From positions 1 to 64,000 of the IMG/VR virus record IMGVR_UViG_3300048571_000088: a stretch of 64,000 bases of DNA; one strand, written 5' to 3'. Shown piece by piece: positions 5,273 to 31,996 of the stretch. Each line of letters begins with the position of its first letter. Position 1 is the stretch's first letter. The position numbers and the translations under genes are program-made. Below the pieces are notes generated by a model, which worked only from the letters and a program-made list of their open reading frames with translations, was not told the origin of the DNA and ran no database searches.

Positions 5273-6331
5273 TTAGTCTTTAACTTTTAGTAGGTAACGA
5301 TTACTAATTACTTTAAATCGTAAATCTGTACTAAGTGATTTAAATACCAAACCTTCCCTGTATTTACCAGACAAGCCAGATTCACCGTCTGCTTCTTTAA
5401 GTAATAACTCTAATAATTCTTCTTTTGATAGTGTATCAGATTTACTAAGTTGTTTTAAAGTAAGATTTTGCATGTATACTGGAACATAGTTTAACCCTAA
5501 CGTTAAACACATAAGTTCTGCATCAGTAGGTACCATATATCCAGCAGTATTAATATTATATACACTGTAAATATAAAGTAGTGGCTCTTTAACTCCTTCA
5601 AAGTTACTTTGAATTTTAGGGGACACTAGTTCCCCTTGAAAGGCAAATCCGTTTGGAATTACATTAAGAACTGGTTTGCCGACTAAATTAAAAGGTGACT
5701 GAGACTCCAAAGGAATCTTTAAATTACGAGAACAAACAGACTGCAATTCATCACTATTGATTACTGTCGTTGAGCTACCATCTAATTTATAAGAGATTTC
5801 AAACACTTCGTCATTTAAGTAAGCACTGTATACTTCATTTAAACAATTCTGTAAACGTTCTAAATCTGTTTTAGGTACTAAGTAAGAAGGGAAACGTGAT
5901 CCACTAGTTTGATTGTCAATTGATGTTTCTGGCTTTTCATACTTACAAATCAATAAGTATTCAGTTAAGTCAGCACCAATCTCAAGACTATTAAAATAAT
6001 TTTGTTGTTCTTCGTTAAAACAAGTTAAAGGAACGCAATATCCTTGAGATACTTGACCGCGCAATTTAATTGTCTTAATTAAATAGCCACTAACGGAATC
6101 ACCATTATCTGTTTGAGTAGTGCGTAAAGGAAGCTTATTTAAGTCAGACTCGTAAGGTTCTAGTTGAGGACACAGACTATCGACTTCATGATAGATGCAC
6201 TTATGACCGACTTGGTACAAGCCTTTTCCAACCACTACTTTCCAACCACGAACAGTTGCTACTTCAATCTTATCCGCTTCAGGAATAGATTGCAGATCTA
6301 AGATTGTTTCTAGTGTTGCTAATTTTCTCAT
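5273..6331 (-). CDS. RNA ligase, DRB0094 family (Rnl2-like)
   Basis: N-terminal OB module (RKLAT...ADKIEVATVRGWKVVV, KLRGQVSQG); ligase motifs KLDGSS, QGEL, REGLVFK and FKVISN. Confidence 0.9.
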   Translation of the reverse strand: MRKLATLETILDLQSIPEADKIEVATVRGWKVVVGKGLYQVGHKCIYHEVDSLCPQLEPYESDLNKLPLRTTQTDNGDSVSGYLIKTIKLRGQVSQGYCVPLTCFNEEQQNYFNSLEIGADLTEYLLICKYEKPETSIDNQTSGSRFPSYLVPKTDLERLQNCLNEVYSAYLNDEVFEISYKLDGSSTTVINSDELQSVCSRNLKIPLESQSPFNLVGKPVLNVIPNGFAFQGELVSPKIQSNFEGVKEPLLYIYSVYNINTAGYMVPTDAELMCLTLGLNYVPVYMQNLTLKQLSKSDTLSKEELLELLLKEADGESGLSGKYREGLVFKSLSTDLRFKVISNRYLLKVKD

Positions 6332-23451: not shown

Positions 23452-23656
23452 TTAAAATAATACTACAGTTTAAAAATATTAAAATTAGTAACCGCAAGAT
23501 TTCTTTAGTATAAAAGTTCAGAAATTAATTTTAAAATTACCTTTACTAACTACGTTACCGATTTAGTAGCCTTCCGTATTTAAAAGAGCAATTTCGGAAA
23601 CCCCTTTAAAAATCCTCTTAAGCTTTTAATATTTTTAAACTGTAGTATTATTTTAA
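23452..23656. repeat. 33-bp perfect inverted repeat enclosing 139 nt
   Basis: TTAAAATAATACTACAGTTTAAAAATATTAAAA at 23452-23484 and its reverse complement at 23624-23656. Confidence 0.9.
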
Positions 23657-25427: not shown

Positions 25428-25483
25428 CAGAATACTTTTTGTTTTATAAACTATATAAATTTTAAATTTGCTGTTAGTATTCT
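25428..25483 (-). ncRNA. ACAGCAA module RNA, open form (copy B)
   Basis: UAA-AGAAUACU-AACAGCAA ... AGUAUUCU-G. Confidence 0.65.
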
Positions 25484-25490
25484 TTATGTA

Positions 25491-25566
25491 GTAGACGCTG
25501 GACTCGAGCCAGAAATACTATTTCGAGTGCACGATTATTAGTCGTGGCTACTAGGTTTACGTCTAT
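25491..25566 (-). pseudogene. Degenerate tRNA-like sequence (D arm lost)
   Basis: UAGACG/CGUCUA acceptor, CACGA-CUAAUAA-UCGUG arm, CUGG-CUCGAGU-CCAG T-like arm. Confidence 0.5.
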
Positions 25567-25788
25567 TTAAGATTAGTTAATACTTTTTATTTTATAATCT
25601 CTTCAAGGTAAAACCAATTATCTTCGTAATCATTAAATCTGCCACCGCCATTTAGAACATGTTGCATTCTATTTTCTGGTACGTCGCAAGCTAAAAGTTC
25701 TTCTTTTGTTGGTTTTTGCAGCCAACAATCAATAAAGTAATAGCCATGTTGATTATAATCATTTACAGCTTCTGTAAGAACCCAGACG

Positions 25789-26376: not shown

Positions 26377-26436
26377 CAGATTACATTCAATTATTAAATA
26401 AAAAGTTTAAATTTTGAAGGTTGCTGTTAGTAATCT
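26377..26436 (-). ncRNA. ACAGCAA module RNA, open form (copy C)
   Basis: UAA-AGAUUAC-UAACAGCAA ... GUAAUCU-G. Confidence 0.65.
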
Positions 26437-26441
26437 TTAAT

Positions 26442-26563
26442 TGGCCGAAAGAGTAGGATTTGAACCTACGTGTGCCGGTTCCCATTATAATATTTGCTGT
26501 TAATATTTTTTACAAAATATATTCATATATTACCGGTGCCTTACCAGACTTGGCTATCTTTCG
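26442..26563 (-). ncRNA. tRNA body (Pro-like) with permuted ACAGCAA module inserted in the anticodon loop (copy F)
   Basis: CGAAAGA/UCUUUCG-G-CCA acceptor; intact D and T arms; the CCGGU/ACCGG stem encloses AUAUUUU-GUAA-AAAAUAU-UAACAGCAA; the loop ends UGGGA. Confidence 0.8.
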
Positions 26564-27838: not shown

Positions 27839-27958
27839 TCAGAACGGCAGGGTTCGAACCTACGTCTCTATCTCCCAAAGATAATGTTTAAGAGTTGCTG
27901 TTTGTATTCTTTACAGAATAACTTAACTAAGCGCTTTAACCGACTAAGCTACGTTCTG
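27839..27958 (-). ncRNA. tRNA-Pro(UGG) body with permuted ACAGCAA module inserted 5' of the anticodon arm (copy G)
   Basis: CAGAACG/CGUUCUG acceptor; D arm; insert containing UAUUCU-GUAA-AGAAUA-CAAACAGCAA; then UAUC-UUUGGGA-GAUA and the T arm. Confidence 0.8.
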
Positions 27959-28009: not shown

Positions 28010-28083
28010 TGGTTGGACTGGAAGGTACTGACCCTTCTTCAACAGATTAAAAGTCTATTGCATCACCTTAATGCTTCAATCCA
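28010..28083 (-). tRNA. tRNA-Lys(UUU)
   Basis: UGGAUUG/CAGUCCA-A-CCA, AUAGA-CUUUUAA-UCUGU; atypical T loop GUCAGUA. Confidence 0.8.
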
Positions 28084-29898: not shown

Positions 29899-30596
29899 AA
29901 TAAAAATAATTATTTAATAACAATAAATCATAGAACCACTATTTCAATATTGTTATTACAGGTTAATTGGAACCTCCAGTTTTTAATTAACTTCATCATA
30001 ATCTTGGTACTGCAACCAACGGTAGGTGCTAATTAAAGCTTCTTACATTCGTAGCCTACTTCCGAACTACTACCCAAGTGGCTAATTGGGAGGTCATGAT
30101 TTTAATTTAAAATATTTTATAAATCTTCTTTTTTAACTACTTTAAAATGATCTTCATCGTATAATTGATTTTTATAATTAATTTCATTCTGTATTTTAGT
30201 CTCTTTCGTATGGTCTGTCATAAGCCTATTATACAAATAAATGGCACTTGGCTTATCATATTTTAAAAATGACTTAGACATATTTCTACTCCAAGAATAA
30301 GATAAAGTCCAAAAATCTACATAACCATAATCAATATAACGTCCAAGGTAAGCAACTGAATAAAATTCCCCTCTATTAATAATAGTTGGAATTTTTGGAT
30401 CAATATTTTGTAATTCTTGCGGTATAAAGTTTTCTTTTTTATCGGAATACTTTTTTACTGCCAGTAATATCAGAAATAAAACAAGAATGAGGAAAGCTAA
30501 AGTACACATTATTTTAATCCTTGCATAAAAGTTTAAGAAGTAAAGAATAGTATTGGATTGTTCGGTACATGTTAATAATCTTTGAACTACTTTTAA

Positions 30597-30717
30597 CAGA
30601 TTAGTATTTTTATCAAGTGGATTCGAACCACTGCCTTTTTTGAGTCAACAAAAACGCTCTAACCTCTAAGCTATGTTCCCTAATGGCGGGAAAGTTTAAA
30701 TTTGCTGTTACTAATCT
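30597..30717 (-). ncRNA. ACAGCAA module RNA, open form enclosing tRNA D, anticodon and T arms (copy D)
   Basis: UAA-AGAUUAGUA-ACAGCAA ... UAGCUUAGAGGUUAGAGC ... AGUGG-UUCGAAU-CCACU ... UACUAAUCU-G; no acceptor stem or CCA. Confidence 0.8.
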
Positions 30718-30723
30718 TTAATG

Positions 30724-31296
30724 TTATTTAATAGAGTTTGCACTAACAAACATATAAATAATATTCATTTCTAGTTCATCAATCAGATTATGAGCTTGGT
30801 TGATTAGCCTGTATTTAATTACTTCTCTGACTTCCATAAGAACAGAACCTAAAAAATTAAGTCCATTCCATTGGTTTGAATCTAAAATTAAAGGATCATC
30901 TGCGGAAAGACCTACACCCCAAATACAATCTACAGGGGATGCCTCTACAAGAAATAAACCATCAGTATCTGACAGTTTTTTTGTTAAATCTTTGTCAGTA
31001 GTAAATTTAAGATAATTTACTTCGTACATTATTTGATAACTTACTTTAGACCATTCTGTGTCTGAATAATTCTTTACGTTTCTTCCTAGTCTTTTAGCAG
31101 TATAAGGATCTTCTGCCTCGTGAATCAATCTCATACTTTCTGTATCTTTAAAGAATTCAGCTTTACGGTACATAAACATATGTTCTGTAGTATAGAAAGT
31201 TAATCCGTTATAGATAATTCCTTTAGGAATATCATGAAAATTACTAAGAAAATTTGTTAAGAAGTAATAATGAGTATCTGTTTTTAAATTATTCAT
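30724..31296 (-). CDS. NADAR (YbiA-like) family protein
   Basis: FLSNFH, TTEHMFMYRKA, AKRLGR, LVEASPVDCIWGVG and GLNFLGSVLMEVRE. Confidence 0.92.
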   Translation of the reverse strand: MNNLKTDTHYYFLTNFLSNFHDIPKGIIYNGLTFYTTEHMFMYRKAEFFKDTESMRLIHEAEDPYTAKRLGRNVKNYSDTEWSKVSYQIMYEVNYLKFTTDKDLTKKLSDTDGLFLVEASPVDCIWGVGLSADDPLILDSNQWNGLNFLGSVLMEVREVIKYRLINQAHNLIDELEMNIIYMFVSANSIK

Positions 31297-31996
31297 TTTC
31301 TGTTTCTAGAATTAAGTTATTAGTTGCTTGATTAAAATTATAAAGTAGACGATCTAAACCAAAAGCAATCTCCAGTACAAAATGATCAGAAGAAAAATCA
31401 GTTCGTTTTGAAACAGAGCAAACTTCCATCCATTTGTCACCATTGTTTACTTCAATATCTAAAGTATTTAAGGAATAAGAAGGTAATCTATCACTAGTAA
31501 CAATACGAGTTGGTAGTTTTAATAGTTCAAGTACTAGATTACCTAAGTCTTTAATAACATTTTCTTGATATTCATTTTTCGTACTAATTGAATAAATACA
31601 TTGAAATTCAAGTTGAAAAAACTCTTTAAATCGACAATGTTTTGTTGCTTGGTCTTGTTCTTTACGGAAAGACTTTGAAGCTTGAAAAACACACAAAGGT
31701 GGTTTGTGACTTAAAGTTAATAATTGGTTTGCATACGCATAGCTTAAAGCAGTTGTTTCTGGCTTTAAAGATAATGTATCTGAAATTTTAAAATAATCAG
31801 ACTCTGAATACTCAGGGTTAATTTGATCATTACTAATCAAACAACTCCCTTCAATCTCATGAAAACCCCAAGCTTTATTTTGACTACGTAAGATGTTTTT
31901 AACACCTAAAGTAATAAATTGTTTGATAAAGTTTCGAATTAAAATATCTTTTTCATTGTAAGCAACAATGCCATTAGTATTTGTCAAACTAAGCAC
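31289..31996 (-). CDS. Truncated class II aminoacyl-tRNA synthetase catalytic domain (GlyRS-like)
   Basis: LKPETT, motif 2 KSFRKE...RFKEFFQLEFQ, YS..TLDIE, WMEVCSVSKRTD, motif 3 LEIAFGLDRL; the protein ends shortly after motif 3. Confidence 0.8.
   Translation of the reverse strand: MLSLTNTNGIVAYNEKDILIRNFIKQFITLGVKNILRSQNKAWGFHEIEGSCLISNDQINPEYSESDYFKISDTLSLKPETTALSYAYANQLLTLSHKPPLCVFQASKSFRKEQDQATKHCRFKEFFQLEFQCIYSISTKNEYQENVIKDLGNLVLELLKLPTRIVTSDRLPSYSLNTLDIEVNNGDKWMEVCSVSKRTDFSSDHFVLEIAFGLDRLLYNFNQATNNLILETENE

What the first reader, a model, noticed from the sequence alone, without database searches (positions are those of the whole stretch)
30597..30717. tRNA mimic in which the module stem replaces the acceptor stem
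Seen: a D arm, an anticodon-like hairpin (UUUUUG-UUGACU-CAAAAA) and a canonical T arm are enclosed by the 9-bp module stem, with an extra UUCCC/GGGAA hairpin and no acceptor stem or CCA. Known: YrlA Y RNAs join a Ro-binding terminal stem to a tRNA-like elbow. Inference: this is the closest analogue of a Y RNA in the window and cannot be aminoacylated.
Basis: partly seen in the sequence, partly recalled or inferred. Interest (0 to 1): 0.8.

Follow-up and report, generated by a model that had tools for sequence, protein, structure and literature searches.

The report
Permuted tRNA-like phage Y RNA
A 124-base RNA gene in a freshwater jumbo phage joins a conserved helix, found in many phages next to a Ro60-like protein gene, to a complete but circularly permuted tRNA with its own CCA, so it is a Y-RNA-like tRNA mimic of a new design, not a tRNA without an acceptor stem.

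Summary
The element is real and lies on the minus strand, 30597-30720. The 9-bp terminal stem, D arm, T arm, 18-nt anticodon-like hairpin and UUCCC/GGGAA hairpin are all present. The "extra" hairpin stacks on a C6-A7/U66-G67 remnant to give a perfect 7-bp acceptor stem, and its loop begins G73-CCA. So this is a whole tRNA cloverleaf in circularly permuted gene order.

The "module" (helix, CAGCAA strand, A-rich strand, 3' G) is a covarying RNA family with no Rfam model. It sits on the same strand beside DUF2828 genes:
- 13 of 14 records found by RNA pattern alone encode DUF2828.
- My model gives 66 of 66 hits on the gene's strand.

The window's DUF2828 protein folds like Ro60. Relatives enclose tRNA-like domains in several topologies, often with an encoded NCCA. 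The same RNA occurs as open (permuted) and closed (tRNA-order) genes.

Best reading: a Y-RNA-like partner of a phage Ro60-like protein, probably opened by RNase P to expose the CCA. No RNA data were available. It is not a member of YrlA by that family's model. Novelty: new variant of a known kind.

The parts
30718..30720 (-). 5' flank UAA of the module. It begins 3 nt after the stop codon of the NADAR ORF.
   Evidence: Conserved UAA-AG start in the window's copies. Closed copies cap the same helix with a G-UAA loop.
30709..30717 (-). Module helix P1, 5' strand AGAUUAGUA
   Evidence: Perfect 9-bp complement of 30598-30606. Matches the helix of model R1. The family helix covaries.
30693..30708 (-). 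Joining strand carrying the family's invariant CAGC(A)A motif (ACAGCAAAUUUAAACU)
   Evidence: CAGC is invariant in 30 aligned copies. The same strand leads into an acceptor 3' strand plus GCCA in L272, L307 and L322.
30684..30692 (-). Acceptor 3' strand positions 68-72 (UUCCC), discriminator G73 and CCA
   Evidence: Read directly from the sequence. ARAGORN cloverleaf of the permuted sequence.
30681..30683 (-). UUA linker between CCA and G1. The predicted RNase P cut lies between 30681 and 30680.
   Evidence: Position is read from the sequence. The cleavage is inferred from M. smegmatis YrlA (PMC4201824).
30674..30680 (-). Acceptor 5' strand positions 1-7 (GGGAACA)
30656..30673 (-). U8, A9 and the D arm (GCUU-AGAGGUUA-GAGC) with G18-G19
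   Evidence: Rfam tRNA alignment.
30637..30654 (-). Anticodon-like arm UUUUUG-UUGACU-CAAAAA. The loop is 6 nt, or 8 nt if the G-C pair opens; not the canonical 7.
30616..30632 (-). T arm AGUGG-UUCGAAU-CCACU
30614..30615 (-). U66-G67, pairing with A7 and C6. The module branches off after G67.
   Evidence: Rfam alignment, model positions 6-7 with 64-65.
30597..30613 (-). A-rich joining strand AUAAAAA, module helix 3' strand UACUAAUCU and the conserved 3' G
   Evidence: The 3' G follows 88 of 106 helices on the DUF2828 strand and 0 of 19 on the other strand.
36191..37663 (-). DUF2828 / DUF7788 gene, the Ro60-like candidate protein partner (phrog_850 'RNA-binding protein')
37681..37721 (-). Simple module copy 18 nt upstream of the DUF2828 ORF
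   Evidence: R1 36.3 bits.
25428..25486 (-). Simple module copy after a tRNA-like body
   Evidence: R1 52.2 bits (a training sequence).
26377..26439 (-). Simple module copy directly after the tRNA at 26445-26563
   Evidence: R1 55.8 bits (a training sequence).
27839..27958 (-). tRNA-order gene (Pro UGG-like) with a closed module (helix capped by GUAA, then ACAGCAA) between the D arm and the anticodon stem
43773..43878 (-). tRNA-like gene (acceptor and T arm) with a closed module
   Evidence: Homologues in L240, L283 and L334.

Best explanation
The element is a Y-RNA-like noncoding RNA of a 242.6-kb freshwater phage. It is one of at least eight module-bearing RNAs in the phage's tRNA island.

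It has two parts:
1. A conserved 'module': the terminal helix P1, a CAGCAA-containing 5' joining strand, an A-rich 3' joining strand and a 3' G.
2. A complete tRNA-shaped domain encoded in circularly permuted order.

Inferred mechanism:
1. The RNA is transcribed on the minus strand with its neighbours.
2. The phage's Ro60-like DUF2828 protein binds the module, as Ro60 binds the conserved helix of Y RNAs.
3. Host RNase P cuts 5' of G1 in the G-CCA-UUA loop, and trimming of UUA exposes a G73-CCA end.
4. This leaves a nicked or two-piece RNA held together by P1 and the acceptor helix, as in M. smegmatis YrlA and two-piece tmRNA.
5. The tRNA-shaped domain then brings a tRNA-recognising factor to the RNP, or distracts one. 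Candidates are an exoribonuclease, a CCA-adding or charging enzyme, or a tRNA-targeting defence nuclease.

Shown computationally: the anatomy, membership of the module family, the linkage to DUF2828 and the Ro60-like fold. Inferred: transcription, protein binding, cleavage and the cellular role.
For: Anatomy:
- The cloverleaf is complete, with U8, A14, G18-G19, G26, G53-C61 and the UUCGAAU T loop.
- An NCCA in that register is expected at about 1% (CCA frequency 0.0104 per position in module sequences).

Family:
- P matches model R1 end to end, E = 2e-5, and was not a training sequence.
- All copies in the genome lie in the tRNA island on the gene strand.
- A search using only the 5' motif found a >=7-bp partner for 106 of 198 hits on the DUF2828 strand, against 19 of 109 on the other strand. 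The partner was followed by G in 88 cases against 0.
- Five of 7 helix pairs show changes on both sides.

Linkage to DUF2828:
- 99 rule-found modules lie on the DUF2828 strand and 0 on the opposite strand in 80 loci, 1.30 Mb.
- 66 of 66 R1 hits are on that strand, many within about 30-150 nt of the ORF.
- Among 100 other viral loci, only three that carry closed modules had hits.
- 13 of 14 records found by RNA pattern alone encode DUF2828. The base rate among cultured phage records is 710 of 50,697.
- R1 also hits beside the gene in E. coli phage bumzen, Mycobacterium phage Kingsolomon and Synechococcus phage BUCT-ZZ01.

Partner protein:
- The AlphaFold model has pLDDT 79.5.
- Its top full-length matches are Ro60 9l5y_B (E 2.4e-6) and 2i91.
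- The DxSxS...T...D residues are invariant.

Relatives:
- 29 of 86 distinct modules enclose a T arm.
- NCCA follows the acceptor 3' strand in L163, L173, L201, L153, L157, L158 and L183. These are truly open genes, not tandem closed ones.
- The same RNA exists as closed, tRNA-order genes ending in NCCA (L233).

Precedents: YrlA cleavage and CCA; the phiLo Ro60-Yrl-PNPase complex; Bas63 gp130 as a counter-defence gene.
Against: - There is no RNA evidence. No RNA run holds the phage, and the reads laid show no joints or ends.
- P lies 5.5 kb from the DUF2828 gene, not beside it.
- The thermodynamic optimum (-28.4 kcal/mol) pairs CAGCAAA with the anticodon-stem 5' strand rather than forming the cloverleaf (-22.7 kcal/mol).
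- Module entry at positions 67/68 was seen elsewhere only in the minimal elements of L272, L307 and L322, so P's exact design has no close orthologue to give covariation.
- YrlA's model and its GNCGAA motif are absent.
- Protein-RNA binding is untested.
Confidence: 0.6

Rival explanations
1. A true circularly permuted tRNA gene. The module acts as an intervening sequence whose ends are cut and ligated through a circular intermediate. RNase P and 3' trimming then release a decoding tRNA.
For: - The gene order is acceptor 3' strand, G73, CCA, 3-nt linker, G1 and onward. The permuted sequence is a full cloverleaf.
- Intact tertiary-contact nucleotides.
- The phage encodes an RNA ligase of family PF09414 at 5306-5803.
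Against: - The anticodon loop is 6 or 8 nt, so no codon can be assigned.
- There is no splicing endonuclease and no RtcB in the phage.
- The termini form a plain helix, not a bulge-helix-bulge.
- Many family members cannot be restored to a tRNA by removing the module, for example those where it replaces the anticodon arm or the acceptor stem.
- The module is conserved and covaries like a functional part.
Confidence: 0.08
2. The modules are processing or punctuation hairpins for tRNA-island transcripts, recognised by a host or phage nuclease. DUF2828 is merely a neighbour in the same island.
For: - Copies sit between tRNAs or directly after them.
- The conserved flanks (UAA or UUU before the helix, G after it) look like cut sites.
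Against: - Modules also flank DUF2828 where there is no tRNA array. Kingsolomon has three in tandem after the gene; L137, L138 and L143 have one directly after it.
- Closed copies sit inside tRNA-like bodies, where cutting would split the molecule.
- A processing hairpin would not need to enclose a folded tRNA domain.
Confidence: 0.12
3. A decayed tRNA pseudogene disrupted by a selfish palindromic repeat, with no function.
For: - The anticodon loop is abnormal.
- Several odd tRNA-like genes occur in the same island.
Against: - Every tRNA tertiary-contact nucleotide and a perfect 7-bp acceptor are kept.
- The helix sequences differ between copies with compensating changes, unlike the terminal repeats of a transposon.
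- P is identical in a contig from another sample, while nearby DNA varies.
- The family spans distant phages.
Confidence: 0.05

Closest known systems
YrlA, the bacterial and mycobacteriophage Y-RNA-like RNA (Rfam RF02553; Chen et al. 2014, PMC4201824)
   Same: - A helix formed by the two ends, plus a tRNA-like domain with T arm, D arm and acceptor stem.
- Encoded on the same strand as a Ro60-type gene, often in several copies.
- M. smegmatis YrlA is cut by RNase P in the acceptor loop, carries CCA, and its halves stay bound to Ro60.
- In Mycobacterium phage Kingsolomon a sub-threshold YrlA match (37.9 bits) is itself enclosed by a module with ACAGCAA.
   Different: - The RF02553 model finds nothing in this phage at E <= 10.
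- The GNCGAAN0-1G motif is absent and CAGCAA takes its place.
- The partner protein is DUF2828, which Pfam's TROVE model does not match.
- P keeps an anticodon arm, and the module enters within the acceptor 3' strand rather than at the anticodon position.
- CCA is encoded rather than added.
Circularly permuted tRNA genes of Cyanidioschyzon merolae and Thermofilum pendens (from my own knowledge; reviewed in PMC4090602, listed)
   Same: The 3' acceptor strand lies upstream of the 5' strand, joined by a short intervening sequence. The two ends of the precursor pair with each other.
   Different: - Those genes are matured by the bulge-helix-bulge endonuclease through a circular RNA, and they give decoding tRNAs.
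- Here there is no such motif or enzyme, the anticodon loop is non-canonical, and the terminal helix is a conserved functional module.
Two-piece (permuted) tmRNA (Rfam RF04321; from my own knowledge)
   Same: A bacterial or phage tRNA-like domain encoded in permuted order with an internal CCA. The precursor is processed into two pieces that stay base-paired.
   Different: P has no mRNA-like reading frame and no pseudoknots, and tmRNA has no Ro60-type partner. Rfam's tmRNA models do not match P.
Phage Ro60 ribonucleoproteins: Thermus phage phiLo Ro60 with Yrl1/Yrl2 (PMC12135203) and Bas63 gp130 (PMC11482910)
   Same: - A phage-encoded Ro60-fold protein with nearby small structured RNAs.
- phiLo Ro60 is the best structural match of the window's protein.
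- Bas63 gp130 sits upstream of a tRNA array and counters the Ppl defence system. Its authors guessed that some of the 'tRNAs' are Y RNAs.
- A related Felixounavirus carries four modules there, one of them tRNA-like.
   Different: - phiLo's Yrl RNAs were picked by a CGAA motif and a stem-bulge-stem shape, and no tRNA-like domain is mentioned in the passages I read.
- No RNA partner has been defined for the Bas63 protein.

Membership tests
YrlA (RF02553) | Match to the family covariance model at or above its gathering score (69 bits) | tested here: not met
   No match in the whole phage genome at E <= 10. None in 20-48 kb at E <= 5, nor in 30560-30760 at E <= 10.
YrlA (RF02553) | GNCGAAN0-1G motif near the 5' end (PMC4201824) | tested here: not met
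   The 5' part reads UAAAGAUUAGUAACAGCAAAUUUAAAC. The only CGAA is in the T loop.
YrlA (RF02553) | tRNA-like T arm, D arm and acceptor-like stem | tested here: met
   Rfam tRNA alignment and ARAGORN cloverleaf. The order of the arms differs from YrlA.
YrlA (RF02553) | Encoded within about 4 kb of a Ro60 orthologue, on the same strand | tested here: inconclusive
   P is on the same strand but 5.5 kb from the Ro60-like DUF2828 gene. Another module copy lies 18 nt from it.
YrlA (RF02553) | Bound by the Ro60 protein | not testable with these tools
   Needs pull-down or a gel-shift assay.
tRNA (RF00005) | Model match with a contiguous acceptor stem made from the 5' and 3' ends | tested here: not met
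   The match is local: 36 bits over model positions 6-65 only. The acceptor stem exists only in permuted order.
tRNA (RF00005) | 7-nt anticodon loop with U33 and a purine at 37 | tested here: not met
   The loop is 6 nt (UUGACU), or 8 nt if the closing pair opens. ARAGORN reports a 2-nt 'anticodon'.
Circularly permuted tRNA genes | 3' acceptor strand upstream of the 5' strand, joined by an intervening sequence | tested here: met
   UUCCC-G-CCA-UUA-GGGAACA at 30692-30674.
Circularly permuted tRNA genes | Splicing endonuclease available for maturation through a circular intermediate (the bulge-helix-bulge motif at the paired termini was judged only by reading) | tested here: not met
   PF01974 and RtcB (PF01139) are absent from the phage. 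By direct reading, the termini form an uninterrupted 9-bp helix with UAA and G overhangs; no formal motif search was run.
DUF2828-associated module RNA (model R1, defined here) | Full-length match to R1: helix, CAGCAA strand, A-rich strand and 3' G | tested here: met
   32.1 bits, E = 2e-5, model positions 1-64. P was not a training sequence.
DUF2828-associated module RNA (model R1, defined here) | Same strand and same genome as a DUF2828 gene | tested here: met
Ro60 / TROVE proteins (for the partner protein) | HEAT-repeat ring plus vWA domain with MIDAS residues | tested here: met
   Foldseek full-length matches to Ro60 9l5y_B and 2i91 (TM 0.46-0.57, E 2e-6 to 7e-6). D289, S291, S293, T361 and D393 are invariant.
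Ro60 / TROVE proteins (for the partner protein) | Match to Pfam TROVE (PF05731) | tested here: not met
   No match at E <= 0.01. The protein matches DUF2828 and DUF7788 instead.

The most novel reading that the evidence does not exclude
The module marks a class of 'handle-tagged' tRNAs and tRNA mimics whose free NCCA end is the point of the design.
- P would be opened by RNase P and then charged or CCA-repaired, perhaps by the class II synthetase-core-like protein encoded two genes upstream.
- The Ro60-like DUF2828 ring would hold the handle, and possibly the 3' end.
- The result would be a phage RNP that stores, protects or delivers charged tRNA-like molecules while host defences attack tRNAs.
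- The open and closed gene forms would be natural circular permutations of one functional RNA.
Probability: 0.12. Interest if true: 0.9.

Novelty: new variant of a known kind. Interest (0 to 1): 0.72.

Why it matters
Ro60 and its Y RNAs are conserved from bacteria to humans, yet what they do in phages is open. This element leads to an RNA family with no Rfam model. The family accompanies the DUF2828 type of Ro60-like protein, a gene present in 710 cultured phage records, including Felixounavirus, mycobacteriophages, and Listeria, Staphylococcus, Campylobacter and cyanobacterial phages.

The family gives that protein a concrete set of candidate RNA partners. It also shows that one conserved handle is grafted onto tRNA bodies in several ways:
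- in place of the anticodon arm;
- in place of the acceptor stem;
- at the hinge between the D and anticodon arms;
- within the acceptor strand, as in P.

It also provides natural pairs of circularly permuted genes for the same RNA.

A Felixounavirus homologue, Bas63 gp130, has been reported to counter an anti-phage system. The RNAs' role in counter-defence can therefore be tested directly in E. coli.

Tried and rejected
- **Close relatives of the locus.** A search by the neighbouring NADAR protein in viral contigs and by megablast against cultured phages found nothing.
- **RNA evidence.** The only RNA runs listed held about 6% of the sampled words. When laid, they matched short unrelated bits. 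There were no joints and no ends at P.
- **Small self-cleaving ribozymes and other Rfam families.** Nothing was found apart from weak matches to a Dictyostelium class I RNA, which merely reflect the module hairpin.
- **Archaeal-type intron or RtcB ligation.** The enzymes are absent.
- **Defining 'splice' borders of the closed modules.** I deleted every possible insert and ran ARAGORN. It accepted too many variants to be informative.
- **A conserved synthetase-like partner.** The class II core-like ORF next to P is absent from 105 other DUF2828 loci.
- **The worry that the permuted NCCA elements are tandem closed genes read across a boundary.** Their upstream flanks lack the complementary strand.
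- **Literature.** Searches for permuted tRNAs in phages and for DUF2828 found nothing relevant.

Full report
**What is there**

The window is the first 64 kb of a 242,588-bp IMG/VR virus record. Near-identical DNA is held by freshwater metagenome runs. The window has about 29% G+C, and around the element its genes run on the minus strand.

The finding lies on the minus strand in a 214-nt gap between a NADAR-domain ORF (30724-31296) and a 130-aa ORF (30117-30509). Read 5' to 3', from 30720 down to 30597, it is:
- UAA;
- a 9-nt helix strand;
- ACAGCAAAUUUAAACU;
- UUCCC-G-CCA-UUA-GGGAACA;
- U8-A9 and a D arm;
- an 18-nt hairpin;
- AGGC;
- a T arm;
- UG;
- AUAAAAA;
- the complementary 9-nt strand;
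- G.

Rfam's tRNA model matches 30614-30675 at 36 bits, but only over model positions 6-65. ARAGORN does not call it.

**The acceptor stem and CCA are present**

The Rfam alignment pairs C6-A7 with the UG that follows the T arm. The adjoining 'extra' hairpin supplies G1-A5 paired with U68-C72. The two stack into a perfect 7-bp acceptor stem, and the module strands enter between positions 67 and 68.

The hairpin loop is G73-CCA plus a 3-nt linker to G1. When 30680-30614 is joined to 30692-30684 in silico, ARAGORN draws a 76-nt cloverleaf with a 7-bp acceptor, G73 and CCA. Only the anticodon loop is abnormal, at 6 nt.

U8, A14, G18-G19, G26, G53-C61 and the UUCGAAU loop are all kept. So the gene is a complete tRNA in circularly permuted order, not a tRNA whose acceptor stem has been replaced.

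One caveat applies. The minimum-free-energy fold (-28.4 kcal/mol) prefers to pair CAGCAAA with the anticodon-stem 5' strand over the cloverleaf (-22.7 kcal/mol).

**The module is a family**

The 5' motif recurs in the window:
- Three copies are simple hairpin-enclosing units (25428-25486, 26377-26439, 37681-37721).
- Four copies are 'closed', with the same helix capped by G-UAA. They lie inside tRNA-order genes (26445-26563, 27839-27958, 40587-40712, 43773-43878).

A pattern scan of IMG/VR found further copies with different, compensating helix sequences in tRNA islands of other phages. No Rfam family matches them.

I aligned 30 simple copies (A3) and built model R1. P was not in the training set, yet it matches R1 end to end at 32.1 bits, E = 2e-5. 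In the whole phage genome the copies are confined to the tRNA island.

The copies in A3 were chosen by their pairing, so I also ran a test that used only the 5' motif:

| Strand | Motif hits | With a >=7-bp partner within 310 nt | Partner followed by G |
|---|---|---|---|
| DUF2828 strand | 198 | 106 | 88 |
| Opposite strand | 109 | 19 | 0 |

Five of 7 helix pairs show changes on both sides.

**The partner**

The window encodes a DUF2828/DUF7788 protein (36191-37663, minus strand), 18 nt downstream of a module. PHROGs names its family 'RNA-binding protein'.

An AlphaFold model built on 15 homologues has pLDDT 79.5 and pTM 0.78. Its only strong full-length PDB matches are Ro60 of Thermus phage phiLo and Xenopus Ro60, at E 2.4e-6 to 7.3e-6 and TM 0.46-0.57. 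The MIDAS residues are invariant. Pfam's TROVE model does not match.

The linkage to the RNA is strong:
- In 16 loci fetched by the protein, 10-11 carry a module on the gene's strand within about 20-450 nt.
- In 80 further loci (1.30 Mb), a rule-based finder gives 99 modules on the gene's strand and 0 on the other.
- In the same 80 loci, R1 gives 66 of 66 hits on the gene's strand; 17 of these were training sequences.
- Among 100 other viral loci (0.78 Mb), R1 hits only three, and those three carry closed modules.
- Of 14 testable records found by RNA pattern alone, 13 encode DUF2828. These include fragments of 5-7 kb.
- The gene occurs in 710 of 50,697 cultured phage records.
- R1 also hits beside the gene in E. 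coli phage bumzen, Mycobacterium phage Kingsolomon ('Ro-like RNA binding protein') and Synechococcus phage BUCT-ZZ01.

**Architectures in relatives**

Of 86 distinct modules near DUF2828 genes, 29 enclose a T arm.
- **Module in place of the anticodon arm.** The order is T arm, acceptor hairpin, D arm, which is the YrlA topology. bumzen (L231:2598-2707) and Kingsolomon are examples. In Kingsolomon a sub-threshold YrlA match is enclosed by a module with ACAGCAA.
- **Module in place of the acceptor stem.** The D, anticodon and T arms stay in normal order.
- **Encoded NCCA.** Several elements carry NCCA directly after a 7-bp acceptor 3' strand, followed by a 6-140-nt spacer and then G1 (L153, L157, L163, L173, L183, L158, L201). 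In a strict automated set this was 3 of 9, against a 1.0% background. These are truly open genes.
- **Open and closed forms of one RNA.** BUCT-ZZ01 has two genes in tRNA order: acceptor 5' strand, D arm, ACGUAAAAAC linker, closed module, AAGCCGUAGGUC linker, T arm, acceptor 3' strand, NCCA. Their linkers match those of the open, permuted L163 element.
- **The closed loop.** It equals the 3' G plus the 5' flank trinucleotide of open copies in the same lineage: GUAA here, GAUU in L272.
- **A minimal form.** L272, L307 and L322 have a 6-bp helix, a closed module and GCCA. The junction is the same as in P: (C/U)GCAA, then UUUAAA(C/U), then the acceptor 3' strand, then GCCA.

**Mechanism**

The best-supported reading has four steps, all inferred:
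1. DUF2828 binds the module as Ro60 binds the Y-RNA helix.
2. RNase P cuts 5' of G1.
3. The UUA is trimmed, so a CCA end is exposed on an RNA held together by P1 and the acceptor helix.
4. The tRNA-shaped domain then engages a tRNA-recognising factor.

The precedents are these:
- M. smegmatis YrlA is cut by RNase P at this site and carries CCA, and both halves are recovered with the Ro60 protein (PMC4201824).
- phiLo Ro60 and its Yrl RNAs form a complex with host PNPase (PMC12135203).
- Bas63 gp130, a Ro60-like protein upstream of that phage's tRNA array, counters the Ppl defence system (PMC11482910).

**Rivals**

- **A decoding permuted tRNA.** This is unlikely. The loop is 6 or 8 nt, there is no splicing endonuclease or RtcB, and many relatives cannot be restored to a tRNA by removing the module. 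However, the phage does encode a PF09414 RNA ligase.
- **A pure processing signal.** This does not explain modules beside DUF2828 where there is no tRNA array, nor closed copies inside tRNA bodies.
- **A pseudogene.** This does not fit the intact tertiary-contact nucleotides. It also does not fit the finding that P is identical in another sample's contig while nearby DNA varies.

**Limits**

- No transcript data could be found.
- P has no close orthologue of the same design, so its own helices lack covariation support.
- Protein binding, cleavage and function are inferred, not shown.

**Verdict**

- The Y-RNA idea is supported in kind.
- Membership of YrlA fails.
- The element belongs to a widespread RNA family, with no Rfam model, that accompanies Ro60-like DUF2828 proteins of phages.
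- Novelty: new variant of a known kind. Interest: 0.72.

Noticed in passing
window 26445-26563, 27839-27958, 40587-40712, 43773-43878 (minus strand): Four tRNA-order genes carry a closed module: the helix is capped by G-UAA (imperfect or variant in two copies), followed by ACAGCA(A/U). It lies between the D arm and the anticodon stem, or in the anticodon loop. Without the insert they look like Pro(UGG), Glu(UUC) and an acceptor/T-arm-only body. The same design occurs in L272:5170-5290, in L233 and in L250.
   Followed up: partly
window 29967-30076 (minus strand): A structured-looking RNA lies upstream of the 86-nt 'tRNA-Met'. A 151-nt contig from a wastewater RNA run matches it with 2 differences over 110 nt, then joins a 19-nt match to 28010-28028. 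There is no Rfam match and its identity is unknown.
   Followed up: no
window 31289-31996 (minus strand): A 235-aa ORF resembles only the catalytic core of class II aminoacyl-tRNA synthetases (GlyRS, HisRS and PylS models; best E 7e-13). It lies two genes upstream of the element. It is absent from 105 other DUF2828 loci.
   Followed up: partly
window 30724-31296, 33924-35075, 35449-36093 (minus strand): A NADAR-domain protein directly precedes the element. TelA and a TilS N-terminal (lysidine synthetase) domain protein lie between it and the DUF2828 gene.
   Followed up: no
window 5306-5803 (minus strand): An ORF of about 364 aa matches the RNA ligase family PF09414, E 5e-15. It may be relevant to sealing nicked RNAs.
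   Followed up: no
L272:4950-5077: An open module sits at the variable-arm position of a tRNA-like body. The order is T arm, acceptor closed by a GCUU loop, D arm, then an anticodon arm with a 7-nt loop.
   Followed up: no
L163, L201, L173, L183, L158 (module-enclosed elements of 189-257 nt): Structured spacers of 70-140 nt lie between the encoded CCA and G1, flanked by a UUGAU-like leader. Their content is unknown. They begin exactly after CCA, so a self-cleaving or other functional RNA is possible.
   Followed up: no
records behind L055 and L099: The DUF2828 gene is split into a 165-aa ORF and a 380-aa ORF about 1 kb apart. This could be an insertion or an intron.
   Followed up: no
window 23452-23484 and 23624-23656: A perfect 33-nt inverted repeat with 139 nt between its arms, in the gap after tRNA-Arg.
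   Followed up: no
window 25490-25575 and 37735-37843 (minus strand): Odd tRNA-like genes. The first has an acceptor and a T-like arm and is missed by both ARAGORN and Rfam. The second has an AAA anticodon and a long extra arm, and lies directly upstream of a module and the DUF2828 gene.
   Followed up: no
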